Of a DNA stretch of 64,000 nucleotides, positions 4,331 through 62,606 are shown in pieces. Every line of letters begins with the position of its first letter. The first letter of the stretch is position 1. Source of the stretch: Phyllobates terribilis. Taxonomy: Eukaryota. The stretch lies in the NCBI RefSeq assembly GCF_046119375.1, contig NW_027362773.1, positions 212,040,001 to 212,104,000 on the forward strand, read 5' to 3'. The notes below the pieces were generated by a model. The model had not been told where the DNA came from. It was given only the letters and a program-made list of their open reading frames with translations, and searched no databases. A program made the translations under genes and the position numbers.

Positions 4331-7300
4331 CTGAGAGGGTAAAAAAGGAGCAAAATTAAAATATCACACTACATAGTTATATAGTCTATGTAAATATACT
4401 GACGCAGAGTTACATCCTGTATTATACTCCAGAGCTGCACTCACAGTTCTGCTGGTGCAGTCAGTGTACATACATTACGCATCTTGCACTGAATCGGTTT
4501 TCTAAACTGTATTATGCTCTAGTGCTAAAGCCAAACTCTTGCTGGTTTCTATTGGAAACAGTCAGCAAGCTTGTTGATGACATTTAACTCAGCTCAGCTC
4601 TAAAGTTTACCATGCTACCTGCTTTGTGGCAGAATTAATTTTCTTATACTCAATTAGATGAAAACAATTCTTCTCACTACATCCATAACTGTATTGACAC
4701 TGAACTGGTAATGCAGGCAGAGATCAGCTCATCTCCCTACAGAATTGTGAATACTGCTCTGCAGGAAAATGGGACAGAACCCAAGTTGTACTATACAATC
4801 AACACCTATTATAACAAATAATTTTTTTTACCAAGTATCTGTGCTCTTTGTGCTGGAGGAAAGAGGACCTGCAAGCAGCGGTTCAGGTACGGGGTCAGGT
4901 CCTCCAAGAAAACAGTGCAGAATTGGATAAAGAGTTCACGTTCCTGGGGGCTGAACGCAGCTTCCTCGGCTCGGTGGAACGTCAGGATGGATTTAACGAC
5001 CTATGAAGGAGACCGAGAAAAAAAACAATACATAAAAGGATCCTGCATAACTACAACCACCAGGATGGAACAATTGCTGAAAAATAGTAGTTTTACAACA
5101 GCTGTAGTTGGACAGTTTCTCCTGACATCATGTTGTCCTAGTGACTCACTGACATGATCTCTGACTTTTCATGGCTGTTCACAGATCCAACCAATTCCCA
5201 CAAGATCAGGAAACAGTCAGTATGTTTATGGGAAAATCCATACAGTCAGGAACGATCGCTTCTGCAAACAAAATCACTGTATGTACCTTTTCCAACGCGT
5301 CCTGCAATGTGTTGGTCACTTCTTCAGTTAGAGCCACAGGACAGCAAAGCCGCAAGTCATTAAAGGCCACCAGGATGTTGTTAAGAAAGCAGGCCAAGGG
5401 CGGGAAGTCCAGGAGAACCATAGGGGGCTGCAGGGTCCCCGGCTGGGCAGGTGGTGTTGGCACCGGTGGGATGCTGGACCCGAGAACTGCAGTGGTGGAG
5501 ATCAGCGTATACATGTTCATCTCCTCCTGAAACTTCTCCACTGCCTCCTTTGCTCCCCGTGCAAAGTTCTCGGCAGCAACCCTCTGGAATATGGGCGCCA
5601 GCTGCCCACGGAAATCTGCACCCACGCGGCTGAAGGAGAGTCCAAAATACATGCACTGCCCTAAGAGAGAGTCCAAACGACTGCCTACCCCTCTCTGAAG
5701 GTCGCTTTCTAGCACCTGCAGGAACTCGCTCACTTTCTGTAACACCCATCCGTGGAATATAGCGCCTTCGCTGACGGGCAAGGAGCCTACAGGAAGAGGA
5801 GGGAGGAGAAGGGGGTCTTCATCGGAGAAGATGGCGCGATACTGGGTGATGACATCGAACAGGTGCACGCGGCAGCTCTCAATGGTCTTGGTGAGATGGA
5901 AATAAGGGTCGTCTTGAGGGATGGAGCTTTGCATGGAGCGGAGCCAGGCGTCCCGGGCCTGCAGGAACTTTATCCGTAACTCTGCTTCCGTGAAGACGTC
6001 CATCCTGCGCAGGAAGCCGATCACCCGCAGGCAGGCGGGCAGCTGGATGTTACTGCGCAGCTGCTGGAGGAGCTGGGTCAGCATCAACTGGGCAGACTGG
6101 CGGACCTCATGCACTATGCCCTGAAGAGAAGGAGCACACACCGCATAAGAGGCAGGATGATATATTCTGTCTACAAGATGTCTACTGACAACACAATTTA
6201 CTAGTGAACCGACAGGATACATGTGTGAGGTCAGCGCTCACACCTGTATGACAGGGATCGCTGAGAACTTCTTCTCCAGCCGCTTCACGTAGGCCGCCAG
6301 CTCCAGCGCCTCCTCGTAGTACCCGTTCCGGACACACGTGTCCATCAGCTGCGGGATCTCCAGGATTTCTAGGATCTCGGTGTGCCGGTTCAGAGTCAGC
6401 GTGTTCATCCGCCGGCTGGAGCTGATATCCTCCGCCTGCTTCATAAACCCCCTGCAGAGAAGAGAGAGATCATGTAAAGGTACAAAGGCGGAGACGCGGG
6501 CGACGGCAGCAGGGCCACGGGAGCAGTAGGGTGATGGGAGTAGTGGTGACATGGGTGGCATGAGGGAGGAATAGTGATAGAATAATGAAAGTAGTAGTAG
6601 TGACCAGCGACGGCGGGACCACAGGCGTAGCAGCGACGGCGGGACCACAGGCGTAGCAGCGACGGCGGGACCACAGGCGTAGCAGCGACGGCGGGACCAC
6701 AGGCGTAGCAGCGACGGCGGGACCACAGGCGTAGCAGCGACGGCGGGACCACAGGCGTAGCAGCGACGGCGGGACCACAGGCGTAGCAGCGACGGCGGGA
6801 CCACAGGCGTAGCAGCGACGGCGGGACCACAGGCGTAGCAGCGACGGCGGGACCACAGGCGTAGCAGCGACGGCGGGACCACAGGCGTAGCAGCGACGGC
6901 GGGACCACAGGCGTAGCAGCGACGGCGGGACCACAGGCGTAGCAGCGACGGCGGGACCACAGGCGTAGCAGCGACGGTGGGACCACAGGCGTAGCAGCGA
7001 CGGCGGGACCACAGGCGTAGCAGCGACGGCGGGACCACAGGCGTAGCAGCGACGGCAGGCTGATGGGAGTAGCAGGCGCCGGGTGACCTGCAGCTCTCCT
7101 GGAGGCCGGGCAGTTTGCTCAGTAGCCGGGACACGTTGTCCTCCACTTGGCTGAAGTCCCGGTAGATGAGCTCGGTGCACTCCGCTGTGCGGATGAAGGT
7201 CTTGTAGTGAGTGAACGCCAGGTCCCGGGTCTGCTGCAGGATCTGCGCCCGCTCCTCCGCCAGCCTCTCCGGCTCCCTCCGCAGCTTCTCCACCCCGAAG

Positions 7301-18700: not shown

Positions 18701-21700
18701 AAATAACTACGGTGATACCAAACTTGTAGTAAAAAAGATATATAAAAAATGTTTTCAATATGTATTTTAATAGTTTTAAAAATTCAGAACTTTGTTAAAA
18801 AAAAAGTGAAATGATTGATCTCCTCTGAAGGAACATGATGGAGGCGACGTGGGCCTTCAGTGGCCGGCTCCATACCCACGCAGGTCCTGACGTACCGTCC
18901 ATATGTGGAATGGGGTTTTCTGGTAAAAACTAGTTCTGGGGTCCGACCGCTGGGTCATGAGGATCGGAAGGTCAGACCCATCCGCTTTCTATGGTTCTGC
19001 GGGAAAAAGCAGAGCGCAGCACTCAGCAGCCCTATAGGGAACGGATGACGCGGCAGTCGAGTGCGTGCTCTGCCGCTCTAATATAGCGGGGGATAAAAGT
19101 GCCCCGTTCTGCAAAGCTTTCTTTTAGCCCCCAGACTGGTCAGGTTCTCTGTAAATCTACCAGGCCCGGCAGGTAATAAGTCGTGTTAAGTGCTTACAAG
19201 ATTTTCCTCCTCTTGCTTGTGACAGTCGGGCTGAATAGTCTGCGGACAGACTCGTTGCTGCGCTTCGGCCGCTGGGGCTCCTCCTCGCTGACGGTCTCCC
19301 CTTTATCTTCCTCTTCTTCGTTTTCCTGCTGACTGTCCTGTTCCATCACCAACTGGTGGAGAGACACCAAAGACCCCCTTTGTCCCATCTCCCACGTGAT
19401 GGACGCCTCCTCTCTGGGGGAGCAAGCACGGGGGCTCTTACTGGTTTTAGCAGAGACCCTTTGTAGACAGGCATCTTCCCTACAGAAGTCTGTCTCACAC
19501 AGGTCTCCGAATATTACATCGGGATTGTCATCTTGACAGAGTAATAAGAACTTAGATCTTATGGCAGACAGGCTGCACGAGGGACCACGGTCTACTTCTG
19601 ACCTGGAGGGACGAGAAGGACATAGATCTCATCAATCCCCATTTCTGTGTGGAGTCCGCCTCATTACAGAAGGAGAGGACCTCAACCAAACCTGGCTGCT
19701 TTCTTCTGTCCATCAGTTAAGGGGCTGCAATACCACGCACCACCTGTAGACAAGGGTGGCGCTGTCTATTATAGAAAGCAGCCATGTTTTTCAACCCCCT
19801 TAACTATATAGGAACTCACTGAGAAGAGCTCACCCTTGATCTTAAAGGCTTTGAGGGAGATTAACCCATTCCTACACATTATGTGCTTCAGGGTTATTCC
19901 AGCAGTGTACGTACCCCGCTCCTTTTTCTTGACTCATGCCTTCTTTGCTCTGTGATGCTGCAGTCAGACCTTCGGGTGCGGGGGTCTTCTCGTCCTCAGG
20001 AGACGTGTTTCCCAAGCTCAGCTCTCGCTGCGACTCCGGGTTGGGGGCTTCTTTGGACTCTTCATTCAGCTCTGCAAAATCTTTTTGTGCAAGCTTTAAA
20101 AAAAAAAAAAAAAAAAAAACAAGAACAGATTAGGTAGGAGAAGTCGGGATAATTCTATCTGTAGGTTGGTGGTCAGAACGACCTCCAGTACCCCCACAAG
20201 TCCTGAGAAATAAAGGGCCGGAGCAGCTAAAGGGCCGGAGCAGCTAAAGGGCCGGAGCAGCTACAAAAAACCTGAAGGCGGCACGGTGTTAAATGGGCGA
20301 TCCTGCTTAGTCGTTCTCAGGATCGGTGGGATTCAGGAGGATTAACCTCTCGCTGATCACAAAGTGACGACCCGCCGACAATCAGCCATTACTTACGGTC
20401 AGTAAGAAGGAGGGGATGCTCTGAATCTTGCTCTTGAACATATCATAAACCTTCTCTTTGATTGTAGACAAGGAATAATTTGCAATCAGTGGATGCTTCA
20501 CGTTCCTCTCCTGGATGATGTGCAGCAGATCTGCCTGCAGTTGCTGGAAGGAGACAGAGATTATCCTAAAATCTGCGCAACCGAGATGTCGAAAAGTGAC
20601 TGATGCCAGAAGCAACACTCGGTCAATTTATGTACATGGCCCTTAAAGAGGCGGCTCCAGACAGATCCCCTCCTGAAGCCTCGGGGTAAGGGGCGCGGGT
20701 TGACGGCTGATACTCACTCTGGTATTTTTGCTGTTACTAATGTACTTCTTCAAGATGTTCCTGGCTCTGCCAAACCGCTGCTTCTGTATACAGACGACCA
20801 CTGCCTGGAAGAGAAAGGACGATGCAACAACACTGAGCTACAGGACATGTGTCCATCCTTTGCGGGTCCGGAGCCTTTAGGGGCCAAAACTTTCTAGGTC
20901 CTACAACCGAGCAGGAGGTCGGTGCTGTAAGAAGTAGAAGACAGAAGCTGTTTATAAATGCTCCCGTCTTCTCTGACTAAGGCCTTGTGCACACGACCGA
21001 TTTTCTAGAACAAGTGCTAGGCTCCCCCCTGCGGGCCAGGCTCGGTAAATAGGTGATAAAGGGGTTCTCCAAAGAAAACAAGTTAAGTCACTGTAAGACA
21101 ATACCCCTTACCGCCTCTTTCAGCATTTGCTTGTTGGCATTGATGAGATCCGCAGGGAACCACCTGTTTATCGTGTCTATGACTTCAACAGCTGATTCCA
21201 GCGGCGAATCCTTTTTGTCTTCATCAAACGTACAGTCTGAGGATACAGAAATAATCATTGCTTTATAGAAGGAGGATGGCGAGCGATTCTCACCAGAACG
21301 TACCGGGTCCGCGGCAAATCAAAGCTGCAGAAAGTTATCTCCTGCGCGGAGAAAGAAAGGTAAGGGACAAGGAAAGTGGGAGACTGAAAGGTGAGGAGCG
21401 GCGGCCGCCTTATATTCCCGCTCTACTTACCGAGATCATCCCCTTCCTCCACACAGGAGAGGAGCTGCATGATACGTAGAAGTTGGGAGTTCTTCTCCGC
21501 ACATTTTAAACGTCGCTGGATTAAAACTATAAAAAAAAAAAAGGGATGAAATAAGGAGACAGGAATGGCCGACAGCTGCAATTCTGGGACAGAAGTGCGA
21601 TCGACGACATTTATGGGATTTGGCAATAGTGCAACAGCTGATCGCAAAGAGGACGCAGGCGACAGAGCGAAGCAAACGGTGCGAAAGTTGTAATGAAACC

Positions 21701-23181
21701 CAAGAGCAAAAATTATTTTTAGCCCCAACTACATGCACTTAAGAAAAAACAAAAATGGCCCCAAAAGGAACAACCCCTTTAATTATAGTGGCGGAAAAAG
21801 GGAGCAAAGCATTATTGGAAATGTAGTTCAGAGCAGATAAATCAGTCACTGTAAATATATTCTCTATATCAGTTCTTGGAAAAACTGATGGCTGCATAGT
21901 AGGTGCCGATACCCGGGCAAGTACCAGGGCCCGTTATGCCCAGATTTGTAACATCCGTCATTCCAGTGCATAACATACGCGCTGCATGTATGGAGCAGCG
22001 TCATACAGACGGCGCCCGAGGCTAACCGCAGCAATCGGAGAACTGTAACCCCTTAGGTGCCACAGTGAAACAACACCAGCGCACTTAAGGGGTTGGAAAC
22101 AGAGGAAAGTGTCTATCGACTTCCTCGCAACATGATTCAGGGAAGCCAATTATCGTTACTGCCAGTGGTTTAATGAAAACCACATGGGTCTGCCATGTTT
22201 GTACACCTAAGATTGGTAATTTTACAATACTCTGATAAAAAAAATATTTATTTTTGAAGTCTAAAAAAAAAAAATTTCACACCTCTCACCATCGGTTCCA
22301 AGAACATAAAAATAGTTGTGTCAACTGCTGGCGTTTTCAGTAAATAACATTGGTAACACAACTGTGTAAAGTGCGCCACCTGCTGGCGTTTTCAGTAAAT
22401 AACATTGGTAACACAACTGTGTAAGGTGCACCACCTGCTGGCGTTTTCAGTAAATAACATTGGTAACACAACTGTGTAAGGTGCGCCACCTGCTGGCGGT
22501 TTCCAGTAAATAACATTGGTAACACAACTGTGTAAGGTGCGCCACCTGCTGGCGTTTTCAGTAAATAACATTGGTAACACAACTGTGTAAAGTGCGCCAC
22601 CTGCTGGCGGTTTCCAGTAAATAACATTGGTAACACAACTGTGTAAAGTGTGCCACCTGCTGGCGTTTTCCAGTAAATAACATTGGTAAAACAACCGTGT
22701 AAAGTGCGCCACCTGCTGGCGTTTTCCAGTAAATAACATTGGTAAAACAACCGTGTAAAGTGCGCCACCTTGCTGGCATTTTCCAGTAAATAACATTGGT
22801 AAAACAACCGTGTAAAGTGCGCCACCTGCTGGCGTTTTTCTGTAAATAACATTGGTAAAACAATCCTGTAAAGTGCGCCACCTGCTGGCATTTTTCAGTA
22901 AATAACCGATTGATAAAACAATCCATTAAACAGTGCGCCACCTGCTGGCACCTTTCAGTAAATAAATAACATATCCTGTAATAGTGCGCCACCTGCTGGG
23001 CGCCTTCCTGTACAGCTGTCAACCGCTCCTTACTCGACACGATGTCCCGGATCTGGGCGAAGTCCTCCTTTCGGCAGTTTTTGAAGGCGTCCACGTAAAG
23101 ATGGAAAAAGTATTCCAGCACCCACTGGTTAACCAGGGGCTCCAGCTTCAGAAGGCTGCCGTCCTCGGCGCTCAACTCCAT
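15623..23181 (-). CDS. TERF2: Telomeric repeat-binding factor 2, 10 coding exons, 489 aa
   Basis: join complement(23034..23181,21431..21526,21112..21236,20718..20804,20397..20543,19915..20093,19198..19602,18087..18172,17132..17169,15623..15781) = 1470 nt, all in phase. TRFH domain ([39 protein letters not shown]), RAP1-binding-like [15 protein letters not shown]2-binding-like [20 protein letters not shown], telobox Myb domain [22 protein letters not shown]...[17 protein letters not shown]. Confidence 0.95.
16068..16816 (+). mobile_element. Non-autonomous TTAA-type (piggyBac-like) repeat, copy A, in TERF2 intron 9
   Basis: Aligns by eye with 17316-18049 (CTCCCCTTCTTCC...ATGAGGGCTT...GACGAGTTGTAC...TTAGGGGACTTGAAGCTG). 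Ends not resolved. Confidence 0.6.
17132..17169 (-). CDS. TERF2: TERF2 coding exon 9 (38 nt)
   Basis: [12 protein letters not shown]; poly-T GCAG acceptor, AAG|GTAAGA donor; restores frame between exons 8 and 10. Confidence 0.85.
17287..18049 (+). mobile_element. Same repeat family, copy B, in TERF2 intron 8, truncated at right
   Basis: Begins TTAA|CCCCTTCATGAC; homology to copy A stops about 35 nt from the exon 8 donor. Confidence 0.6.
18087..18172 (-). CDS. TERF2: TERF2 coding exon 8
   Basis: [28 protein letters not shown]; 86 nt; A|GTAAGT donor. Confidence 0.87.
18462..18614. repeat. About 55-bp degenerate tandem repeat, 3 copies, TERF2 intron 7
   Basis: GAGGA(C/T)AGA(G/A)AC(C/T)GGCG...AGCAGGAAAGCAT repeated three times. 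Confidence 0.75.
19198..19602 (-). CDS. TERF2: TERF2 coding exon 7 (RAP1- and TIN2-binding-like motifs)
   Basis: [39 protein letters not shown]...[12 protein letters not shown]...SKRRKI; acceptor CCCTCCAG, donor TT|GTAAGC; 405 nt open. Confidence 0.88.
19915..20093 (-). CDS. TERF2: TERF2 coding exon 6 (hinge)
   Basis: [19 protein letters not shown]...QEKGA; poly-T AAAG acceptor; GG|GTACGT donor chosen because it matches the phase of exon 7; 179 nt. Confidence 0.8.
20211..20263. repeat. 17-bp tandem repeat, 3 copies, TERF2 intron 5
   Basis: TAAAGGGCCGGAGCAGC x3. Confidence 0.9.
20397..20543 (-). CDS. TERF2: TERF2 coding exon 5
   Basis: [24 protein letters not shown]...PSFLLT; 147 nt; ACC|GTAAGT donor. 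Confidence 0.9.
20718..20804 (-). CDS. TERF2: TERF2 coding exon 4
   Basis: [29 protein letters not shown]; 87 nt; AGA|GTGAGT donor. Confidence 0.9.
21112..21236 (-). CDS. TERF2: TERF2 coding exon 3
   Basis: [41 protein letters not shown]; 125 nt; GCG|GTAAGG donor. Confidence 0.9.
21431..21526 (-). CDS. TERF2: TERF2 coding exon 2
   Basis: [31 protein letters not shown]; poly-T ATAG acceptor, G|GTAAGT donor; 96 nt. Confidence 0.9.
22325..22999 (-). repeat. 55-56 bp minisatellite, 12 copies, each with a CTCF-core-like motif
   Basis: Unit CACCTGCTGGCGTTTTCAGTAAATAACATTGGTAACACAACTGTGTAAAGTGCGC; minus strand reads CCAGCAGGTGGCGC once per unit. Confidence 0.95.
23034..23181 (-). CDS. TERF2: TERF2 coding exon 1 (MELSAEDG...IRDIVS)
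   Basis: ATG 23181; donor A|GTAAGG; 148 nt. Confidence 0.9.
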
Positions 23182-23678
23182 ACTGCACCCGATTACAAAA
23201 AAAAATAAATAAATAATAATAATTCAGCCGCGAAATGGCCCCACTTCCGGTGATGCTGTCATGTGACCTGGAAGTTGACGACGGCCATGATGGAAAGGGC
23301 GGAAATAGACATTTATTTTTATTATTATTTTTTCTTTTTTTCTTAACATGTAGCGACCTTGCACATACTGAGGTGCAGACAGTATATATATTGGAGATAC
23401 ACTTTGACACAGGTTTCTGTGCCCACATCAAACATGGCTACCGTGAGCTCCACGCTTTTTTTTTCTAGTTTATACGCATATTTTAATTGGTTGGTAGGCT
23501 GAAGGAACCGGCGCTAGTGATAGGATAGTTGTTTTGCAAGTGTCCCGCCTTCTTGAAGGTGATTGGTTGTCACCTTGGAGACCTCACCTGTGTCCACGAG
23601 CCGAGTGTGAGGCGTCGCTGTTACGGAAGCCGGGAGCAGTCATAGCACCAGTTACGTAACGCGTTTTACACACCGGCG
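23182..23678. promoter_or_regulatory. Bidirectional promoter region TERF2/CYB5B
   Basis: 497 nt between divergent ATGs; ETS/GABPA-type ACTTCCGG 23243-23250, GGAAGT 23270-23275, ATTGG 23486-23490 and 23562-23566, perfect palindrome GTTACGTAAC 23651-23660, CpG-rich. Confidence 0.8.
23588..23643 (-). CDS. TERF2: Candidate upstream TERF2 exon (MTAPGFRNSDASHSARGHS), or non-coding first exon
   Basis: Donor CAG|GTGAGG at 23588/23587; acceptor T-rich...GTGCAG|T ATG at 23183/23182; splicing puts ATG 23643 in frame with ATG 23181. No transcript evidence. Confidence 0.45.
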
Positions 23679-23822
23679 ATGGCGAACGGTGAAGGCGGCT
23701 CCAGCCAGGAGTCTGAGGTGACTTACTACAGCCTGGAAGATGTGAGGAAAAGGAACAGCGCGAAGGAGCTGTGGCTGGTGATCCACGGCCGGGTGTACGA
23801 TATCACACGCTTTGTGGAAGAG
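23679..23822 (+). CDS. CYB5B: CYB5B exon 1
   Basis: MANGEGG...[33 protein letters not shown]; GAG|GTGGGT donor. Confidence 0.95.
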
Positions 23823-26800
23823 GTGGGTACCATCAGGCGGCTGTCACTGAGGCTGGGTGTGCGGCTTCTACAGGTGGGAATGAAGAGTGACCGTGATGTG
23901 CGACAATATCTGCAGCAGAGGAGGGCGGCCATCCACAGCTGTAAGTTATAGGGTATAATGGGGTCCCGGTATATGGCCGCTCTCCTGGCTGCCCCTGATA
24001 CTCAATTGTCAGGGTCTCCCAAAAGTGACCCAGGTAGGTAAGGACATCCGATGACCAAGTCAGGGATGGTTAACAGGTATTCCCATCTCCAAGATCCTAT
24101 CCCAATACATATTAGGTGTAACAATAAGAATATTAGCAAACACCTCCAATTAGCAATGTAGTCCAGTTCTTCTGATTAGCTATGCCACTTGTGCAGGGCA
24201 TTGTAGTAGATTGGGTTATGACCACTCATATAGTGACAGTTGCTAGTGGTCATAACCATGGATACCCAATGCCCTGCACATGGTGTAAGTGACATGGCTA
24301 ACCAGAAGAACTATACTACATTTCTAATTGGAGGTATTTGCTAATATTCTTATTATTACACCTACTTCATATTGAGATGGGAGTACCCCTTTAAGGCTCA
24401 TAGTGTCTGATCACACAAAAGTTATTGTAAAGCAAATTGCTGAAATATTTCCTGCTGTCTATGGACCTAGAAAGGTGTCAGATCCCACCGAGCGTCTCCC
24501 CTGTGTAGTGACAGATCGCTCAGAGTGCTCATACTGACCCCTATCCATCACCAGAAATGGGCACGTGATCATCATCCCTGGAGCATGGAGGACGGCGGCC
24601 GGGTCTGAGGAATCGTGAACGGCCGTCACTATCTAAGGAAGAGATGGCAGCAGGATGCGCTATGGGAAAAGAAGACGATCCGGTGGAGGCAGAGTGATGG
24701 CCGATGTCCTGCTGGGAACCTTGTGTCCTGGAATCATGTGGATGTGACACGTACCTCCTACCACATTGTACAGACCCAGGACCCCAGTGAAGGCATTCCC
24801 TAATGGCAGAGCAGCTTTCTTCAGGGTAATGGTTCTTCAGAAAAGGAGGAACAAACCAAAGAGATGAATGTGATGACTCGTCTCCAAATTCCGTCACGTG
24901 CTGGAAAATGAGTCCAATCCATGGAGGCCTCACCAAGACATGGATAGGATTTGGTGTGAATGTCTGGATGCCAGATACTACAGGACACCTTCAGAGACTA
25001 TGAGGCAGGTCAAGAGGAACCTGCACAATATGAGGCAGGTCAAGAGGAACCTGCACAATATGAGGCAGGACAAGAGGAACCTGCACAATATGAGACAGGA
25101 CAAGAGGAACCTGCACAATAGGAGGCAGGACAAGAGGAACCTGCACAATAGGAGGCAGGACAAGAGGAACCTGCACAATAGGAGGCAGGACAAGAGGAAC
25201 CTGCACAATAGGAGGCAGGACAAGAGGAACCTGCACAATAGGAGGCAGGACAAGAGGAACCTGCACAATAGGAGGCAGGACAAGAGGAACCTGCACAATA
25301 GGAGGCAGGACAAGAGGAACCTGCACAATAGGAGGCAGGACAAGAGGAACCTGCACAATAGGAGGCAGGACAAGAGGAACCTGCACAATAGGAGGCAGGA
25401 CAAGAGGAACCCGCACAATAGGAGGCAGGACAAGAGGAACCCGCACAATAGGAGGCAGGACAAGAGGAACCCGCACAATAGGAGGCAGGACAAGAGGAAC
25501 CCGCACAATAGGAGGCAGGACAAGAGGAACCCGCACAATAGGAGGCAGGACAAGAGGAACCCGCACAATAGGAGGCAGGACGAGAGGAACCTGCATTGTA
25601 TGAGGCAGGTGGGGTTATTGTTAAGGCTGATCACTGTATACTAATCTCCATTGTAGCCTCCTATGCAGGGAGAATGTTGCATTATGTGGTGCCACATTTT
25701 CCAGTTTCATGAATAGCAATGCACAGCAGCATTTTAGGAATTGGGGATGGAAGTCAATTTGTGTTAAAGGTCTTGAAAACAAATGTCCAATTCTTAAGAA
25801 ACATCAGAAGACGCTTAAAGGGATAGCACATGATTAGCTGCATGTGGAATGTATTAGTTCCACAGTGGATTGAGAATTGCGGACGTCGTCCCGGCTCGTT
25901 ATCTGAATAAGTTCTGTGGTTCCCTCTTTTACCAGGGGTCTAATTTCTGGGAGCCCACCAGTTCTGAAAATGCAGCACTGAGTCCTCTGCAGTTTTTCTG
26001 TGTTAGGCATCGCTCGGCTGTGCAGGAATCTGCAGGAGTCCACGTTCACTTGGATGGAGTCACACTGCAGCAGGTGGTCATATATGCCCACGTGCAGAGT
26101 AAAAAACTGTTAAAGGGAAGCAGCGCTGCAACCCCTTTATTCTCAGCGTCAATGAAGGGGTGGGAGTCCCAGTGATGGCATACCCCTAGACTTCTGAGGA
26201 CCATTGACGCCAGTAGATTGCGGCACCAGACATGGTTGGCAGCCTCTCGTCTTCTTATTCTGTAGAAATAACATGTACTTGGCTGTCGCCCAATGTGCCT
26301 GGTATTGAGTCATCACTTATAAGCTGAACCTTGGTCCTCTGCTCACTGGCCATCTTAGAGTCCTGAGTGATAAGAAAGGTGCTGCGATCCTGCTAGGACT
26401 TCAGTTTTGTCATAAAACACAGGCACAACACAGAGTACCTATAAGATTTATTTAAGGAATTAAACTATGGGGTGATCAAAGATCAGAAGAAGACTGAGTG
26501 GCTGTATACTGTGTCTGGCATCCAACTGAAAAGCACATATGGGAGGAACACTGACTTAAGGCTCCTTTAGCTGGATGCCAGGCATAGTATGAGCTTTCGT
26601 TCTCTGCATTTTAGAGGATCCCACCTCCCCCAATTTATCTAAAGTAGCAGTGTGTCCTGACAAGAGGGCAGTAGTGTCTGAAAGTGGAGAAGAAATGCAA
26701 TGCTGCCATTGTAATAACTTGTCAGATTTCTAGACTTGGAGGACCACAGATCCTATAGGCAAAGGCGATAAATTATTAAACAGGTTAAGTATGGCTGATG

Positions 26801-29800
26801 GACGAAATGTGACAGTACAGTCCTATTGTGGTAATCTGACCGGAATGTGATCCTAAGAGAAGCGGCTTATATCCAAAATGGATTTAGATTCTCACAATCC
26901 TGTAGGACACAACGACCCCTGAAATTCCTGTGCAGAGCTTTGTGCGCAAAAGAGGATCTGTTACCAGAAAGGACCTAGGTGCATGTATGGGGAAGACTAT
27001 TAAATCTGTCACCAGGAAGGCACATGGCTGTGAGAACATCTATAGGATCTGTCACCAGGAAAGTACATAGTTGGGAACGTATGTAGGATCTGTCACCAGG
27101 AAGGCACATGACTGTGGTAACATATGTAGAATCCGTCACCAGGAAGGCACATGACCGTGGGAACGTATGTAGGATCTGTCACCAGGAAGGCACATGACTG
27201 TGGGAACGTATGTAGGATCTGTCACCAGGAAGGCACATGACTGTGGGAACGTATGTAGGATCTGTCACCAGGAAGCCACATGACTGTGGGAACGTACGTA
27301 GGATCTGTCACCAGGAAGGCACATGATTGTAGGAACGTACGTAGGATCTGTCACCAGGAAGGCACATGATTGTGGGAACGTACGTAGGATCTGTCACCAG
27401 GAAGGCACATGATTGTGGGAACGTACGTAGGATCTGTCACCAGGAAGGCACATCAATGGCGACATCTATAGGACCTGCCATGATGGGTCATCCACACAGC
27501 AGCCCTGCACACTGACTAGTGGCGGCTGGCGAGTACTGCAGTTTATCTCCCATTCAAGTGAATAGGACTGAGACACAACCAGAACTAAAAGTGCAGAGTT
27601 GTGCCTGGCAAACAATAAAGGTGGCAGCCCCTTCAATCTACTGAGTGCCTGTTGAGATTAGATCCCCACCCACTGATCCAACATTAATGATCTTTACGAA
27701 TGGTGGGCTATTCATTTTTAAAGCAGAACACATGGTGGCTATTTGGCCCTGGGCGGCTACTGACAGGATGTTCCTGCGTGTTTGCTGAGTACATGGTACT
27801 CTTGTGGCTTTTTGGCTACTCCTGCCCGTTTGACTGGAGGTAAGAAAAATTTCTTGTGTCCGGGTGTTGGTATATGATCATATTTAGGTCTCTATCTCAT
27901 AGGTGAAGCTTACTTCCTATTTATTTCCTCTGCTTCGGTGACTGCTGTTTGGCTAGAATTCTCCTCCATGCTTTACACTGCAGCTCCTGTACCCATCAGA
28001 ACGAACATAATGGGTAGAAATAGATTTATCCAACTCCTCCAGTTTATGCAAAGTCAGATGTCATGTGACCTGTTTCTGATCTGCTGATTGACAGGTAAGG
28101 CTGACGGAAGGACATCTGTTCAGGCCATATTCACATGGATATGAATCCTGGACCCCCTATTGATCTGATCCCCCAGGGCTAGCTGAACTGTAGGTCTGGG
28201 AGGATCAGATCAGCAATCTGCCCGTGTTATGACACTTTGGCCACATCTGCAGCTTTTCTGTTACCAGTTAGTAACTTGAAGGATCAAAGGTTGCTGCTCC
28301 ATGTATTATCACTATTGTGGGCTGCTGCCAAGTTTCAGCCTCTTGGCTCATGATAAAAGCTGTGTGCCTGACGAGTGGACCGGCAGCCGTGCTCACTGGT
28401 GTCCGGTGCCCTGACTTGTTGATTAAATGATCAAAGAGATTTTGTTCTTTATTGCTTTTACGGAGGGTGTAAATATCATACCAATCAAAATTTACTTAAA
28501 GGGCAGCTATGCATTTTGCACGCTACTTAAAGAAGCACTCTTCCTCCCATCAATATTTGTGTCACCTTTATATATTGCAAACATATTATATGGCACTGTG
28601 CACTTACAATTGCTCATTTTGCCTTTCTACCCAGCTAATTCTGTTTTCTCTGCTCTATGTAGAAACAGGAAGTGTCTTGTCCTTGCAGAATTCATTCCCC
28701 TCTTCAACTCCTGACCCAGCTGCTCCATCCTCCCCCCTGCCATTGACTTTTGCAGTAACTTATGAGTCATACAGTGTAATCTGACCTCCTTTTTCCACAT
28801 GGAGCTTATGATTCATATAGTCCATTTTTTAAAGGGAACCTGTCACCAGAAATAACGCTGTTAACCAGCCCGGCGCCTTCACGTAGCCGAATACAGCAGG
28901 GAGAAAATGAACTTTATTCTTCCCACCAGCATTTGGTTTCAGTCAGGGGGTCAGGGGCTGCACTTGTTTAATGAGAATACAGAGCGTTGGCTGTAACCGC
29001 ACCCCCGGCCCTGATGGCAGCCGGCCCCAATGCAGAGTGAGTGTCAGTCAGGGCCGGGGCCGCGGTTACAGCTGCGCTCTGTATTCTCAGAGCGGTGACT
29101 GCACCAGAGCAGCAGCCGGGTAGCACAATAACGCTATTAACCTACAGATTAACCGCATATCTGCAGGTTAATAGCGTTGAACCTCTGTTGACAGGTTCTC
29201 TTTAATCACGTGATGTCATAAAGCTAATGGAAAAGAGAAGAATTAGCTGGGTAGAAAGGCAAAATGAGCATTTGTAAGTACACAGTGCTATATAATATAA
29301 TGATTGCAATATATTAAGAGAATAAAAAATTTGATGGCAGAGCTTCTCCAATATTAGTTATTCATTGCTCCATTTCCAAAGCCACAATTTTCTTACTTTT
29401 CCAGTGTGAAATCTCTGAGGGCTTGTTTTCTTTCTGGTTTCTCTTGTGCTCACCCTTACTCTCTCTTGGCTTTCCCTGCGCTTGACCTCCCTCTCTCGCT
29501 TCTCCTGCCCCTTGTCCCCCTCCCTCCATCTCAGTCTCTCCTGCGCTTGACCCTCCCCCTTTGACCACCATCACCCTCTTGGCCTCCTCTGCCCCTTTTT
29601 TTTTTTTTTTTTTTTTACCTTGGTCTCTCCTGTGCTATGACTCCTCTGCCCCTTTTTTCCTCCTCCTCTGCCCCTTTTTTCCTCCTCCTCTGCCCCTTTT
29701 TTCCTCCTCCTCTGCCCCTTTTTTCCTCCTCCTCTGCCCCTTTTTTTCCTCCTCCTCTGCCCCTTTTTTTCCTCCTCCTCTGCCCCTTTTTTTCCTCCTC

Positions 29801-32800
29801 CTCTGCCCCTTTTTTCCTCCTCCTCTGCCCCTTTTTTCCTCCTCCTCTGCCCCTTTTTTCCTCCTCCTCTGCCCCTTTTTTCCTCCCCCTAATGGGCCAA
29901 CGCCCTCCTCCTCACTTGGCCTTACCTGCCTCGCAGCCTTTTCTGCGCCCTCGACTTTTCCTGTTCTCCACCACAAACAGCGCCACTCTCAATCGTACAG
30001 CTCTTGGAAGAACATAATACTCCACTTTAAGGTGTTCACAGACCTCCTATTATAATGGGCAAGGATCGGATCCCTTAGCTGAATATTGCCAATCTCACTG
30101 CTATATTCATTACACGTGGCATGCCGTTCTCAACTATCGCCACATGAGGGCGCTATGAGCCTGTCAACTCTTTAACAACTATTTTCCTCACTTGGCACCC
30201 GTTTTACCCATGGAATAGTAAACTGCCCAAAGGGAGGGTGGACTGCTACTTTCGACAGGGTGAAAAGTTCGTCATGCCATGCCCCGTATGTTGCGTTCAC
30301 ACAGCAGTAAATTGTGTGCGTGCGCAACAGATCTCTTATGACATCAATTATAGAGATGATTCTACTAAACAGAGTCCCACGCGCTCCGAGCTGCTTTATT
30401 CTGTTTCGACCTTGTCATTATGAACATATTATTGGGGTGTGGTACATCAGGTGGTTCTATTGTGCGCACAAATTGTTATTTATGTCTTTGTGTGTATTTT
30501 TAACTGCTTCAGGATCATTTCATGATGGGCAGTATTTCCGAATTGGACGCTGGTATAAAATACGTCCTATATTGCAATTTATCTAAAACCTTTAATATTT
30601 AAGGATTTGTCCGAGACTTAAAATAAATGTCATATCAGGTTGTAAAATAAAAGCCATTCTGACTTGTTAACCCCCCCATTCCAGCTCTGGCGGTCATGCT
30701 GATCCTTGACGTGTACTGCTGTTGTGGTGCGCTGTACATGCTTATGTGACCGCTGCAGCCAAAAACGTTGGAGGAGGCCAGATCTCAGGATCATGGGTGG
30801 TGATGGTCTGATAGACCGGACCTCCATCAGCCTTTAAAATTAGCAGTGATTCAGCTTGTCAGAAAGAGAGGAGCTGCAGGTGCCGGAATGTCCTGCAGCT
30901 TTCCTCCCTTCATCATCAGCACAAAATTTACCAATTTTTAAATGGAGAGAAAAAGTGGCTTCTCAATGTGTTAACTGCTTTCCAACCCCTGTCATTTACC
31001 CTGGATGGCGCCTGTATCATGTTGAAAGTTGCTGCCAAAAAATATGGTTTTCATACCTCTTCCCTTGCCAATTGTCACAATCGCTTCTGCTCTGAAAGCG
31101 AGCAATTTAAGTTGTAGAAGACATTAATTGGGGGGTGGAGAAGGTCAGATCACGTCAGATTTACTCGCCCTGGGCTTGGTCATGTGATCTCACATCCAGA
31201 ACAACTTCCAACTTTCACTGTAATTTTTCTTGCAACATTTCTTCCCTCCTTCAGGCATCGATACTCACGACCTGCAAAATATACCTTACATATGTGATGG
31301 CAATTTAGTGTCCCTACGGGAAAACATCAGATATTAGAGCAGGGTGATTTTCTCCTTTTTGCAACAGCAGCTCACATTTCACTTCTGTCTGATCTGTTGC
31401 AATGTATCAGTGTAGATGGCACTTCGGGTGTTTAGACTGGAGACGTTGCAGCAAACCATCAGCTGTGGCTATGAGGCTATGTTCACACGTTGCGTTTTTG
31501 CTGCGTGTTTTTTTTCTGCAGGCAAAACTTGCTCTCTTGGCAGTAAAGAAGCGGTTTACAAAAAGCAGGTTTTCCTACGTTTTTTGCTGTGTTTTTCAGG
31601 ATCCCAAAGTTCAGCTTTGCTTCCACCACAGAAGCATGAACAATTCAAGGTGTTAGGTCACCAATGCAAGATGTATATGTGAAACCATAAAACCATTTTT
31701 GGTAAAAAGAGCAATTTGATGAAATTATTTAGTTGAAAAAGATTTTTATGTCTGAAAAAAGTTCATATGAGTTCATGAAAAAAATACACAATTAGAAATG
31801 TAACAGTGGGAGGAGTTGAATTGGTCAGGAATAGTTTACCTAAGACATTGGCAGAGCATTGAGTTTGTAGGACACAGTTTACTATCACACTTTGGTGGGC
31901 CCTTGAGTTGGTCAGGTATTGTTCAATTTCACATCACACCTTGGTCAGCCAATGTTTACTTTAACACCTATCACTAATTTAAATAAACTACTAATCCTAA
32001 CAGCCATTCTTAGGTGAGGAGACCAAGACATTATGGTTTAAACTTGGGAAAATCACAAAAATAAATGGATTTCACATAGTGCTGTACATGCTTTTTTTCA
32101 TTAAAAATGCAGCAAAAACTGATAGCAAACTTTTTGCTGTTTTTTTTTCTTTTTTTTGCATTCTCTATGGGTGAAAAAATGCTGCAAAAACACTGAAAGT
32201 GACATTCAGCAGTTTTCCAATTCGGTCAGGAAAAAAAACTGTGTGCATGAGATTTCTGAAATCTCATAGCTTTTGCTGGTACTGTAAAACTCCCCTTTTA
32301 ATTAGCATAAAAAATGCAACGTGTGAACATAGCCTACATTGCTTTTTTGCTGCTTTTTTTTTCTGCAGCCAAAACCAAATCTATTGGTAGTGTAAAAAAA
32401 AAAAACTAAAAAAAACTGCACACAAAATTCAGGTTTTGCTGCTTTATTTGTTGAGTTTTTCAGGATCCCAAAGTTCAGCTTTGCTTCCACCTTGCAAGTA
32501 TGAACAATACAAGACCTATGTGAAGTCATAAAATATTTTTGGAAAAAAGGGTAGTTTGATCAAATTATGTAGTCGAAAAAGCTTTTTATGAAAAATAGTT
32601 ACTATTCTGAACAAAAAAGTTCATGAAAAAATACACAATTGCAAATGTAAAAACTGCAGGGGGAGTCAAATTGGTCGGGCATTGCTTACCTAGCACATTG
32701 TTGGTTGGGCATTGAGTTGGTTGGGCATTGAGTTGGTTGGGCTTTGTTTACTTTCACACATATCACTAATTTAATTAAACTGTACTAACACTAACATCCA

Positions 32801-35800
32801 TGTTCATGTGAGGACACCAAGACATTATGGTTTCAACTTGGGAAAATCACAAAAATAAATGGGTTTCATATCCTGCTGTACCTGCACTTTTTCACCAAAA
32901 ATGCTGCAACAACTGATGACAATGTTTTTGCTGCTTTTTTTTGCACTTACCCATTGCTTTCTATGTGTGAAAAAAAACACTGCAAAATCACTGAAAGAAT
33001 TGACCTGCTGCAGATTTCAAAAACGCAGCAGTTTTCCAATTCAGTCAGAGAAAAAAAGAGAACAAGCGAGCGCATGAGATCTCTGAAATTTCACAGCTTT
33101 TGCTGGTACTGTAAGAAGCAGCTTTTAATTTTGCAAAAAAAGCAGTAAAAAAAAGTAGCAAAAAACGCAAATTGTGAACATAGCATTATACCTGTACAGG
33201 TTTTTAGGACCTGGATGTCCAGAAGAATGTTTTCATTCACTGCTAGTAGGCCGAGACCTGTAAATTTAAACAGAGAAAAAGTTTTGAATTAGTTCATAGG
33301 AATGGCCTTTCATGCTTAATGGGTGGGGTGTCCAGTACTTGTGGGGGGTCAGACCTTCACAAAAGCGTGATCTCATGAGAGCAACCCCTATCCCAATGAT
33401 ATTTTACCCTGATGAGGCGCACTATATAGCCCCTTGGTGTTTACAGTATGGCATCACAATTGTATGTCTGATGCAATGTGTTGGCATACTGAGAAATACT
33501 TCACATCCCCCCCCCCCCTTGTTTAATTGTGGGTGATAATGGGAGTGGAAATGTAATGATTTCATATGTAGATGATTCACATCGTTGTGTTCAGATGGTA
33601 TAGGATCACACCGCGGGTACCGGCAGGCGAACACCGATTTCAGGAAATAACTTATCTGTGCTTCATTTACAGTAATGATGATGTGATCAGCTCCAAAAAA
33701 AATCTGATCTGCACCGTTCCACTTGTAGCTGTGGTATAGTGAATGATCTCCCTCTATATCCAAAGTGCTATAACCGCATGGCCAAATTCTGTATACTGCA
33801 TATAAAATCAAATCTACTAAGAATACTCTGTGAGCTAAGCTGTTGCAATTCATCAGGCTCATGTTACATCCTGTATTATATTCCAGAGCTGCACTCACTA
33901 TTCTGCTGGTGCAGTCACTGTGTACATACATTACATTACTGATCCTGAGTTACATCCTGTATTATACTCCAGAGCTGCACTCACTATTCTGCTGGTGCAG
34001 TCATTGTGTACATACATTACTGATCCTGAGTTACATCCTGTATTATACTCCAGAGCTGCACTCACTATTCTGCTGGTGCAGTCACTGTGTACATACATTA
34101 CAGTACTGATCCTGAGTTACGTCCTGTATTATACTCCAGAGCTGCACTCACTATTCTGCTGCTGCAGTCACTGTGTGCATACAATACATTACTGATCCTG
34201 AGTTACATCCTGTATTAAACTCCAGAGCTGCACTCACTATTCTGCTGGTGCAGTCACTGTGTACATACAATACATTACTGATCCTGAGTTACATCCTGTA
34301 TTATACTCCAGAGCTGCACTCACTATTCTGCTGGCATAGTCACGGTGTACAGTCATGTTCATCATTATTGGCACCCATGAAGTTTATGTACATAATGTGG
34401 AATATCTCCTGGAAAAAAATGAATCAAGTGAAACAGTTTTTTTGTATAGAGTACTCGTGTTAAATACAAAAGAGCAAATGAAAAATAATATTTAAAAACA
34501 AAAAACAATGGGAGGGAAAAATGGAAAAACCTAAAGCTTGCTGTGACACTGGTATTGGCACCCTTTAAATTAATTTAGTATGGAAACAGATTTTGACTCG
34601 CCTGTGGTAATTCTCAAGAGATTCACCTGTGATTAATTGTCGGTGCTCATGTGACTTGAATTAGCCAATGAATGATGACTTCAGTGTTTTAAAAAAGCCA
34701 CATGGTAGGCCCTGTTCCTTTGTCACAATGGTGAAGACAAAGGAGCTGTCTGAGGACATCGGAACTGCTATTATTAGCAAACACAAGACTTCCAAAGGGT
34801 ATGAGGCCATCTCCAAAGACCTTGGTATCCCAGTTTCAAAAGTGCACAATGTTATTAAGAAGTTTGTCAAGCATGGAACCGTCAAGAGATGTCTTTAAAG
34901 GATGGTGCGAATGGTGGAAAAAACACCACGTCAAACATCTGAAGGCCAGCCTGGAACAGTCTGGGGTCATGGTTTCAACAAGTACCATACGCCGCACACT
35001 AAACCAAGCAGAGCTTTATGGGCGAAGGCCAAAGAAGAAATCATTGCTGAAGATATGACATAAAAAGGAACAACTGATCTTTGCCAAAGAGTACCTTGGC
35101 AAACCATAATCCTTCTGGACACCTGAAACAAAAATAGAGCTTTTTGGCAATGCACAACAACATTTTGTTTACAGACAGAGCAATGAAGCTTATAAGGAAA
35201 AGAACACGTTACCAACAGGTAAACATGGTGGAGGATGCATAATGCTGCGGGGTTGCTTTGCTGCCCATTGTCCTGGAGGCCTTGACCTTATCACAGGAAT
35301 CATGAAATCAGAGAATTATCAAGAGATTTCAGAGCGAAATGTCCTACCGAGTGTAAGAAAACTTGGTTTGAGCTGAAGATCATGGGTCCTCCAGCAAGAC
35401 AATGACCCAAAGCACACATCCAAAAGTACACAGGAATGGTTGAAAAAGAAAAAAATGGTCTGTTTTAGAATGCCCAGCAATGAGTCCTGGCCTCAATCCC
35501 ATTGAAAATCTTTGGGGTGAGCTGAAATTTGCCATTGGGAAAAAGAACCCTGCAAACATTCAAGAGCTTGAACCAACTGCAAGGGAAGAGTGGGAGAAAA
35601 TTCCAGCTGAGAAGTGCAAGAAGCTTATAGATGGCTACAAGAAACGTCTGGAGGCTGTCAGCAATGACAAAGGGTGGGCAACCAAGTATTGATTAGGGGG
35701 GCCTTTATTGCTGCACATGCTGTTTCTTTGTTGAAATTGCAAAATAGAAGTTGAAAAACAATGTTTTATTGTTGTATTACTTTGGACCACTAATTAAAAA

Positions 35801-50581: not shown

Positions 50582-50880
50582 TAGCCATCTATACACGGCG
50601 GGAGGCCACACGTAGCCATCTATACACAGCGGGAGGCCGCACGTAACCATCTATACACAGCGGGAGGCCGCACGGCGCCATCTATACACAGCGGGAGGCC
50701 GCACAATGCCATCTATACACAGCGGGAGGCCGCACGGCGCCATCTATACACAACGGGAGGCCGCACGGCGCCATCTATACACAGCAGGGGGCTGCACGAT
50801 GCCATCTATACACAGCGGGAGGCGGCACGGCGCCGTCTGTACACAGCGGGAGGCCGCACGGCGCCATCTATACTCAGCAG
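50582..50880. repeat. 31-bp CpG-rich minisatellite, about 10 copies, inside the hAT element
   Basis: Unit GCCATCTATACACAGCGGGAGGCCGCACGGC; followed by (CA)n and (CACT)n microsatellites at about 50997-51045. Confidence 0.9.
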
Positions 50881-62590: not shown

Positions 62591-62606
62591 CTGACTAATA
62601 TATCTA

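What the first reader, a model, noticed from the sequence alone, without database searches (positions are those of the whole stretch)
22325..22999. Twelve co-oriented CTCF core motifs built from a minisatellite, in the TERF2 intron beside the TERF2/CYB5B promoter
Seen: each 55-56 bp unit contains GCGCCACCTGCTGG (minus strand CCAGCAGGTGGCGC) starting at 22373, 22428, 22483, 22539, 22594, 22650, 22706, 22762, 22819, 22875, 22935 and 22986. Nine are exact, two have one substitution (22428, 22650) and one has a 1-nt insertion (22762). In the three copies nearest the exon the spacer degenerates heavily (spacing 56, 60, 51 nt) while AGTGCGCCACCTGCTGG stays perfect. Established: this 14-mer fits the CTCF zinc-finger 4-7 core consensus CC(A/G)(C/G)(C/T)AG(G/A)(G/T)GGC(G/A)C; CTCF site orientation sets loop direction; tandem CTCF-bearing repeats are known at DXZ4, Firre and human subtelomeres. 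Inference: one or a few ancestral intronic CTCF sites (the old diverged copies) were amplified into a copy-number-variable super-anchor that points toward the TERF2 body and the TMED6/NIP7/COG8 cluster and may insulate or tune the shared promoter. The motif has one CpG, so binding could be methylation-sensitive.
Basis: partly seen in the sequence, partly recalled or inferred. Interest (0 to 1): 0.85.

Follow-up and report, generated by a model that had tools for sequence, protein, structure and literature searches.

The report
CTCF-motif minisatellite in frog TERF2 intron
A 675-bp tandem repeat just inside the first intron of the telomere gene TERF2 of the golden poison frog carries a near-perfect binding motif for the genome-folding protein CTCF in 11 of its 12 units, all pointing the same way. 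It is a plausible but unproven young, lineage-specific multi-CTCF docking site of a kind already known from mammals.

Summary
Window 22325-22999 is a 12-unit, 51-60 bp minisatellite. Nine units carry the exact 14-mer, two carry one substitution (both CpG transitions that still fit the consensus), and one is broken by a 1-nt insertion.

The window is Phyllobates terribilis. The array fills intron positions +35 to +709 of TERF2 intron 1. It ends 182 bp from the TERF2 ATG and 680 bp from the CYB5B ATG.

The motif block is the least variable part of the unit. It is intact in the three old, decayed exon-proximal units (permutation p about 0.001).

Of 32 minisatellites checked in this window and four other frog loci, only this one carries the motif throughout.

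The array and the motif at this position are absent from TERF2 intron 1 of Dendropsophus, Nanorana and Spea, so an old ancestral site is not supported. Dendrobatid DNA could not be fetched. The motif's only CpG sits at core position 12, where methylation barely affects binding in vitro.

Occupancy and function are untested.

First readers of this scan noted roughly ten other CTCF-like tandem arrays elsewhere in this genome. I saw only their titles and checked none of them.

Verdict: a new member of a known kind (DXPas34-like), of moderate interest.

The parts
22325..22999 (-). Minisatellite of 12 units (51-60 bp) at positions +35 to +709 of TERF2 intron 1. CTCF cores read on the minus (TERF2-sense) strand. 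The youngest, most uniform units are at the low-coordinate end and the oldest lie next to exon 1.
22371..22389 (-). CTCF 19-mer match, unit 1, 19.9 bits
22426..22444 (-). CTCF match, unit 2, 16.1 bits. Core position 12 is C>T (a CpG transition).
22481..22499 (-). CTCF match, unit 3, 22.0 bits
22537..22555 (-). CTCF match, unit 4, 19.9 bits
22592..22610 (-). CTCF match, unit 5, 22.0 bits
22648..22666 (-). CTCF match, unit 6, 19.1 bits. Core position 13 is G>A (a CpG transition, still within consensus R).
22704..22722 (-). CTCF match, unit 7, 19.9 bits
22762..22776 (-). Unit 8 core broken by a 1-nt insertion (plus strand GCGCCACCTTGCTGG). Scores below 10 bits.
22817..22835 (-). CTCF match, unit 9, 19.9 bits
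22873..22891 (-). CTCF match, unit 10 (older unit), 19.9 bits
22933..22951 (-). CTCF match, unit 11 (decayed spacer, 60 bp), 20.0 bits
22984..23002 (-). CTCF match, unit 12 (most decayed spacer, 51 bp), 20.3 bits. The core starts 35 nt into the intron.
23034..23181 (-). TERF2 exon 1 coding part (49 codons plus 1 nt). The splice donor is TCGA|GTAAGG.
21431..21526 (-). TERF2 exon 2. Intron 1 is therefore 21527-23033 (1507 nt), and the array makes up 45% of it.
23679..23825 (+). CYB5B exon 1 coding part, 498 bp ATG-to-ATG from TERF2 (head-to-head pair).
30137..30155 (+). The only other strong CTCF match in the window (17.4 bits). It is on the opposite strand, so it is divergent with respect to the array.

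Best explanation
A young, lineage-restricted minisatellite grew outward from the exon-proximal end of TERF2 intron 1 in Phyllobates terribilis or its recent ancestors. Each 55-56 bp unit carries a near-optimal CTCF core (core only, with no upstream or downstream module) in the TERF2-sense orientation. The array most likely binds several CTCF molecules where the region is accessible. It would then form a one-directional cohesin-stalling platform about 0.2-0.9 kb inside TERF2 and 0.7-1.35 kb upstream of the CYB5B ATG. Such a platform would face loop extrusion arriving from the TERF2 body/TMED6/NIP7/COG8 side. It could also act locally on the shared promoter, for example as a roadblock just downstream of the TERF2 start. 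Shown here: the array, motif strength, co-orientation, position, age gradient, and preferential retention of the motif. Inferred: CTCF occupancy, loop anchoring, and any effect on TERF2 or CYB5B expression.
For: Eleven of 12 units score 16-22 bits. The per-position chance of 19.8 bits or more is about 1.3e-7, or about 1.4e-5 per 55-bp unit on both strands. All are on one strand. None of the 10 other minisatellites in the window, and none of the 21 in four other frog loci, carries a systematic match; the best elsewhere is a single 12.4-bit variant unit. The 17-mer block is the least variable 17-column window of the unit (rank 1-2 of 56). The three decayed units share an 18-column invariant run; permuting the column differences gives p about 0.001. 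Both substitutions inside cores are changes the consensus tolerates. The motif CpG is kept in all three old units, while the flanking GGCG CpG is lost in two of them. CpG observed/expected is 0.6-1.07 across 21400-23800, against 0.50 for the window and 0-0.1 just downstream, which fits a hypomethylated promoter zone. Frogs use the vertebrate CTCF motif with convergent orientation at domain borders, and CTCF and Rad21 are needed for domains in Xenopus tropicalis (PMC8270788). The 55-56 bp spacing exceeds the roughly 36 bp spanned by all 11 fingers (PMC10484683), so neighbouring sites could be filled together.
Against: There are no occupancy or contact data for this species. The array is absent from the orthologous intron of Dendropsophus, Nanorana and Spea, so there is no deep conservation. 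Units 1-9 are 93-100% alike, so their motif identity mostly reflects recent copying rather than selection. The retention test rests on three related units and on non-independent column differences. A second block (TTTCAGTAAATAA) is also retained. Minisatellites are very common here, 11 per 64 kb, so genome-wide some will carry the motif by chance.
Confidence: 0.45

Rival explanations
1. Passenger repeat. An ordinary, neutrally evolving frog minisatellite happened to start on, or next to, a sequence resembling a CTCF core and copied it by slippage or unequal exchange. CTCF may or may not sit on it, but nothing has been selected and it has no consistent effect on TERF2 or CYB5B.
For: Minisatellites are abundant in this window and in the same locus of other frogs. 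The array is young and lineage-specific. With roughly one array per 6 kb, a genome of several Gb would hold some strong-motif arrays by chance. Both motif substitutions are CpG transitions, as expected if the region is methylated in the germline at least sometimes.
Against: The chance of a 19.8-bit motif in one given 55-bp unit is about 1e-5 to 1e-4. The motif is the best-kept part of the three decayed units, despite holding a mutable CpG. None of 31 other arrays examined has it.
Confidence: 0.35
2. The array is a cluster of sites for a different DNA-binding protein. The core contains the E2-box CACCTG/CAGGTG (E-proteins, Snail, ZEB). It also contains CCTGCTG, which resembles ZIC-family motifs (recalled from memory). 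The second conserved block holds GTAAATA, a Forkhead-type RYAAAYA site.
For: CACCTG and CCTGCTG are present in 11 of 12 units, and GTAAATA in all 12.
Against: The invariant run in the old units is 18 nt, extending 7 nt and 5 nt beyond the hexamer, which fits a long zinc-finger footprint better than a 6-8 bp site. A short degenerate motif such as RYAAAYA is expected by chance in about 5% of 55-bp units (my estimate). No matrices for these factors were available to test.
Confidence: 0.1
3. RNA-level role. On the TERF2 pre-mRNA each unit presents CAG|GUGGCG, a weak splice-donor-like U1 site, twelve times just after the true donor. These could act as decoy donors or as an intronic splicing modulator.
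For: The array starts 35 nt after the exon 1 donor and is transcribed in the sense orientation. The read-through frame from exon 1 stays open for 207 codons.
Against: The donor-like sequence mismatches the consensus at +4, +5 and +6 (direct reading). The annotated TERF2 protein uses the upstream GTAAGG donor. No Rfam family matches. The strands show no unusual folding, with z-scores of -0.13 and +0.49. The open frames are explained by loss of the unit's single TGA in variant units.
Confidence: 0.05

Closest known systems
DXPas34 minisatellite downstream of the mouse Tsix promoter
   Same: A minisatellite with tens-of-bp units (34, 31 and 30 bp), each monomer holding a CTCF site. It lies just downstream of a promoter, is lineage-restricted (rodents), and was proposed to have arisen by amplification. 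CTCF-site number varies between related species (PMC3149622).
   Different: DXPas34 is CpG-rich and tied to X-inactivation, with experimental CTCF binding. The frog array is AT-rich outside the core and sits in an autosomal-type housekeeping gene pair. Its units are 55-56 bp with a full canonical 14-mer, and there are no binding data.
Tandem arrays of CTCF sites in imprinting control regions, and tandem CTCF sites at Pcdh/beta-globin
   Same: Several same-type CTCF sites are clustered in poorly conserved sequence (PMC2665242). Tandem CTCF sites act as directional insulators (PMC7087399).
   Different: Those clusters have 3-4 to about 10 sites spread over kilobases and are mostly not built from a short repeat unit. 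Here 11 sites are packed into 675 bp.
CTCF-bearing macrosatellites and satellites (DXZ4, gamma satellites, rDNA spacers)
   Same: A repeat unit carrying a CTCF motif is multiplied in tandem (PMC3491370, listed; bioRxiv 10.64898/2026.07.18.739380).
   Different: Those units are 215 bp to 3 kb and the arrays span tens to hundreds of kb, in heterochromatin-border or X-linked settings rather than inside a first intron next to a promoter.
Promoter-proximal CTCF sites with position- and orientation-dependent effects
   Same: CTCF bound just downstream of a transcription start can block sense transcription, and sites further upstream can repress upstream antisense transcription (PMC12695661). The array is downstream of the TERF2 start and upstream of CYB5B.
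   Different: Those are single sites within about 400 bp of the start in mouse cells. Nothing is known for a 12-copy array, or for frogs.

Membership tests
Vertebrate CTCF binding site | Match to the 14-15 bp core recognised by zinc fingers 3-7 (CCASYAGRKGGCRS) | tested here: met
   CCAGCAGGTGGCGC fits every consensus position (direct reading).
Vertebrate CTCF binding site | Physical occupancy by CTCF (ChIP, footprint, gel shift) | not testable with these tools
   No data for Phyllobates. The frog precedent comes only from Xenopus tropicalis (PMC8270788).
Vertebrate CTCF binding site | Optional upstream (ZF9-11) or downstream (ZF1, GAG) modules of high-affinity sites | tested here: not met
   The core is followed by ACT, not GAG. 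The 20 nt upstream do not resemble the upstream module as I recall it. These modules are optional and do not define the family.
CTCF-bearing tandem repeat (DXPas34 / ICR / DXZ4 type) | Each repeat unit carries a CTCF motif, in one orientation | tested here: met
   11 of 12 units, all on the minus strand.
CTCF-bearing tandem repeat (DXPas34 / ICR / DXZ4 type) | Motif kept better than the rest of the unit, within or between species | tested here: inconclusive
   Within the array the motif is kept better: lowest-variation window, p about 0.001 on three old units. Between species the array is absent in three distant frogs, and dendrobatid DNA was not retrievable.
Domain boundary / insulator | Insulation in contact maps, cohesin accumulation, enhancer blocking | not testable with these tools
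   The only hint is a divergent arrangement with the plus-strand site at 30137.
Transposon-borne CTCF site expansion (SINE B2 type) | The unit is a dispersed repeat found at many loci | tested here: inconclusive
   No other copy of the core or spacer exists in the 64 kb. Public protein sets hold no related repeat-derived ORFs. The flanks show no significant unit similarity. The rest of the genome could not be searched.
E-box cluster | Repeated CANNTG hexamer as the conserved element | tested here: inconclusive
   CACCTG is present in 11 of 12 units, but the invariant block is 18 nt, well beyond the hexamer.

The most novel reading that the evidence does not exclude
This array is one instance of a genome-wide class in the very large, minisatellite-rich Phyllobates terribilis genome: short tandem arrays that multiply CTCF cores next to promoters and first exons. 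Two origins are possible. CTCF-occupied sites may be prone to breakage or replication stalling and so seed tandem duplication. Or selection may favour repeat-built, redundant anchors, as an amphibian counterpart to the transposon-borne CTCF expansions of mammals. First-stage notes of this scan list about ten further CTCF-like tandem arrays in about 770 windows of this genome, several of them at divergent promoters or first exons. I saw only their titles and verified none. Depending on how strong those motifs are, chance could supply from under 1 to about 20 such arrays among roughly 9,000 minisatellites.
Probability: 0.2. Interest if true: 0.75.

Novelty: new member of a known kind. Interest (0 to 1): 0.42.

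Why it matters
If CTCF fills this array, a housekeeping telomere gene and its head-to-head neighbour in a poison frog would have gained a dense, one-directional architectural element within a short evolutionary time, simply by repeat growth. That would be a natural experiment on how many tandem CTCF sites matter. Copy number probably varies between individuals. It would also be the first example of repeat-built CTCF clusters outside mammals that my literature searches turned up. If it is only a passenger repeat, it is a caution: in minisatellite-rich amphibian genomes, strong motif clusters can arise without function.

Tried and rejected
1. Orthologous dendrobatid introns. Ranitomeya imitator, R. 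variabilis and Dendrobates tinctorius loci were found, but no DNA was returned because the files were too large. Anomaloglossus and Engystomops proteins were not on record. Gene tables show only that the TERF2-CYB5B head-to-head gap of 419-491 bp is shared.

2. Alignment of the intron 1 start with Dendropsophus, Nanorana and Spea. Nothing significant lies over the motif. The best local score against Dendropsophus (p = 0.018) sits downstream of the motif. A CTCF-like remnant, CACCAAAGGGGGCGCC, at Dendropsophus intron +48 scores below 9 bits and is not statistically supported.

3. Dispersed-family test through translated repeat ORFs. The word-indexed search returned only TERF2 proteins. The exhaustive HMMER search returned 11 weak hits, and the seven I inspected were unrelated repeat proteins.

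4. The scan's index by sequence returned nothing.

5. Flank-to-unit similarity as a way to reconstruct the founding duplication was not significant (p = 0.22 and 0.86).

6. Hairpin- or cruciform-driven expansion: DNA folding of two units gave z-scores of -0.13 and +0.49.

7. Known RNA families in 21000-24000: none at E of 1 or below.

8. Coding potential of the long minus-strand ORFs through the array was rejected. The annotated TERF2 protein splices at 23034, and the unit length is not a multiple of three.
Full report
**What is there**

The region 22325-22999 is a tandem array. The tandem-repeat tool reports period 55-56, 11.4 copies, 93% matches and score 969, with an equally good 111-bp two-unit period. 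Splitting on the CTGCTGG anchor gives 12 complete units of 55, 55, 55, 56, 55, 56, 56, 56, 57, 56, 60 and 51 bp.

The 14-mer GCGCCACCTGCTGG occurs nine times exactly and twice with one mismatch. It occurs nowhere else in the 64 kb, and 0.02 hits are expected by chance. The twelfth copy (22762) has a T inserted.

**Where it is**

The window comes from Phyllobates terribilis.
- The CYB5B exon 1 translation is 100% identical to that species' annotated protein.
- The ORF starting at 23181 (-) matches its TERF2 isoform X3.
- The annotated protein reads ...IRDIVS|ILIQRRL.... TERF2 exon 1 therefore ends at 23034, with donor TCGA|GTAAGG.
- Exon 2 is 21431-21526, so intron 1 is 21527-23033 (1507 nt).

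The array occupies intron positions +35 to +709, which is 45% of the intron. CYB5B starts at 23679 on the other strand, 498 bp ATG-to-ATG from TERF2.

**Is it a CTCF motif, and is that more than chance?**

Read on the minus strand, the core CCAGCAGGTGGCGC satisfies every position of the consensus CCASYAGRKGGCRS.

The insertion copy falls below 10 bits. The only other site above 14 bits in the window is at 30137 on the plus strand, at 17.4 bits.

An exact score distribution puts 19.8 bits or more at about 1.3e-7 per position. That is about 1.4e-5 for a 55-bp unit on both strands at the window's GC content, and about 1.3e-4 at 60% GC.

As a local control I scored every minisatellite (period at least 10, at least 4 copies) in the window (11 arrays) and in four orthologous frog loci (21 arrays). 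None of the other 31 carries a systematic match; the best is a single 12.4-bit variant unit. The repeat form is therefore ordinary for these genomes, at one array per about 6 kb. The motif content is not.

**Internal evolution**

A unit alignment shows a clear gradient of differences from the consensus:

| Units | Differences from consensus |
|---|---|
| 1-6 | 1-3 |
| 7-9 | 3-4 |
| 10 | 5 |
| 11 | 12 |
| 12 | 17 |

The exon-proximal units are thus the oldest, and the array has grown, or is being homogenised, at the distal end.

Counting variant runs per column, the 17-mer AGTGCGCCACCTGCTGG is the least variable 17-column window of the unit (rank 1-2 of 56). In the three old units the longest invariant run is 18 columns, namely this block plus the next C. 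Permuting the column differences gives p about 0.001.

This is real but modest evidence. It rests on three related units, and the column differences include indels that are not independent. A second block, TTTCAGTAAATAA, is also nearly intact in the old units. It contains a Forkhead-type GTAAATA.

The two substitutions inside cores are both CpG transitions, and both leave a consensus-compatible core: position 12 C>T scores 16.1 bits and position 13 G>A scores 19.1 bits. The motif CpG survives in all three old units, whereas the neighbouring GGCG CpG is lost in two of them.

CpG observed/expected is 0.6-1.07 across 21400-23800. The window average is 0.50, and the value is 0-0.1 just downstream of CYB5B exon 1. 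This fits a hypomethylated promoter zone.

**Comparison with other frogs**

Through CYB5B proteins I fetched the head-to-head locus from four species: Spea bombifrons (L001), Nanorana parkeri (L002), Leptodactylus fuscus (L003) and Dendropsophus ebraccatus (L004). TERF2 exons 1 and 2 were located by tblastn.

| Species | Result for TERF2 intron 1 |
|---|---|
| Dendropsophus | 2.65 kb; no minisatellite like this; no site of 12 bits or more (best 10.8) |
| Nanorana | 2.0 kb; no minisatellite like this; one 17.9-bit sense-oriented site 1.4 kb from exon 1 |
| Spea | 1.0 kb; no minisatellite like this; no site of 12 bits or more (best 6.4) |
| Leptodactylus | No TERF2 exon 1 within 10 kb of CYB5B |

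The first 150 nt of the introns do not align significantly over the motif. The array is therefore lineage-restricted, and an old ancestral CTCF site at this position is not supported.

The informative comparison would be with other dendrobatids, but it failed.

**Dispersed repeat?**

No other copy of the core or the spacer exists in the window. The flanks are not significantly unit-like. Translated repeat ORFs have no relatives in the public protein sets. The rest of the genome could not be searched, so a transposon origin remains open.

**Leads from this scan**

First-stage notes on the same genome include 19 that mention CTCF. About ten of them describe tandem arrays of CTCF-like motifs, several at divergent promoters or first exons, and two with a 56-bp unit. 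I saw only their titles and verified none.

A base-rate estimate shows why they cannot be counted as support. About 770 windows times about 12 arrays gives about 9,000 arrays. Chance would then supply:
- about 0.1-1 arrays at 19.8 bits or more;
- a few at 16 bits or more;
- 15-30 at 12 bits or more.

Whether the class is enriched depends on motif strengths that I could not see.

**Mechanism**

Established knowledge supplies the frame.
- The core is read by zinc fingers 3-7, and all 11 fingers span about 36 bp (PMC10484683). Sites 55-56 bp apart could therefore be filled together.
- Frogs show convergent CTCF motifs at domain borders and need CTCF and Rad21 for domains (PMC8270788).
- Tandem CTCF sites act as directional insulators (PMC7087399).
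- At promoters, CTCF bound just downstream of a start can block sense transcription, and sites further upstream can repress upstream antisense transcription (PMC12695661).

On the minus strand the cores face lower coordinates. They would therefore stall cohesin arriving from the TERF2 body/TMED6/NIP7/COG8 side. Together with the plus-strand site at 30137 they form a divergent pair around the CYB5B 5' end, which is the arrangement typical of boundaries. All of this is inference.

The only in-core CpG is at core position 12, where methylation has a marginal effect in vitro, unlike position 2 (PMC6222495). Differential methylation at both positions does correlate with variable binding in vivo (PMC10484683).

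**Rivals**

- Passenger repeat with no selected role: 0.35.
- Array of sites for another factor (E2-box CACCTG, ZIC-like CCTGCTG, Forkhead GTAAATA): 0.10.
- RNA-level role of twelve weak donor-like CAG|GUGGCG sites just after the true donor: 0.05.

No known RNA family matches. The strands show no unusual folding. The long minus-strand ORFs through the array are a by-product of a stop-poor unit.

**Comparison with known systems**

The closest analogue is mouse DXPas34. It is a rodent-restricted minisatellite just downstream of the Tsix promoter in which each monomer holds a CTCF site, and site number varies between species (PMC3149622). Other analogues are the tandem CTCF arrays of imprinting control regions (PMC2665242) and CTCF-rich satellites.

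The frog array meets the sequence-level criteria of this kind: a motif in each unit, in one orientation. Occupancy and cross-species retention remain untested or inconclusive. My literature searches found no amphibian example.

**Verdict**

The array is a new member of a known kind and of moderate interest. It would become more interesting only if a genome-wide census showed that such arrays are an enriched, promoter-associated class in this genome.

Noticed in passing
window 30137-30155 (+): The only other strong CTCF match in the window (17.4 bits, TCGCCACATGAGGGCGCTA). It is on the opposite strand, so with the array it forms a divergent pair flanking the CYB5B 5' region.
   Followed up: partly
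window 22338-22350 and the same place in every unit: A second conserved block, TTTCAGTAAATAA, is kept in all units (one A>T change in unit 10), including units 11-12. It holds a Forkhead-type GTAAATA and lies 4-16 nt upstream of the next CTCF core on the sense strand.
   Followed up: partly
window 6605-7056, 25002-25609, 27004-27453, 29641-29890, 50584-50889, 58126-58560: The window is very rich in unrelated minisatellites: 11 arrays of at least 4 copies in 64 kb, with periods of 22-97 bp. Several appear to lie within the COG8 and CYB5B gene regions; their intronic placement was not checked. None carries a systematic CTCF match.
   Followed up: yes
window 61526-62597 (+) and 62668-63333 (reverse complement); also 33863-34351: The same 86-97 bp unit forms two adjacent arrays in opposite orientation, a satellite-scale inverted repeat. 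A third array lies 28 kb away, so this looks like a dispersed frog repeat family.
   Followed up: no
window 22337-23181 (-): Three long ORFs (207, 184 and 134 aa) run through the array on the TERF2-sense strand, one continuing from the TERF2 ATG. They arise because variant units lost the unit's single TGA. The annotated protein does not use them.
   Followed up: yes
L002:5093-5111 (-), Nanorana parkeri TERF2 intron 1: A single 17.9-bit CTCF match in the TERF2-sense orientation lies 1.4 kb into intron 1. It is the only hint of a sense-oriented intron 1 site outside Phyllobates, and its position is not comparable.
   Followed up: partly
L004:3873-3888 (-) approx., Dendropsophus ebraccatus intron 1 +48 to +63: CACCAAAGGGGGCGCC resembles a CTCF core with its 5' half out of register. 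It scores below 9 bits, and the alignment to the Phyllobates motif is not significant.
   Followed up: yes
L001-L004 and gene tables: The TERF2-CYB5B head-to-head distance varies widely: 498 bp ATG-to-ATG here, about 0.76 kb in Spea, 3.4 kb in Nanorana and 5.9 kb in Dendropsophus. In Leptodactylus it exceeds 10 kb, and a 37-bp x 115 array fills part of the gap. Annotated gene ends are 419-491 bp apart in three other dendrobatids.
   Followed up: partly
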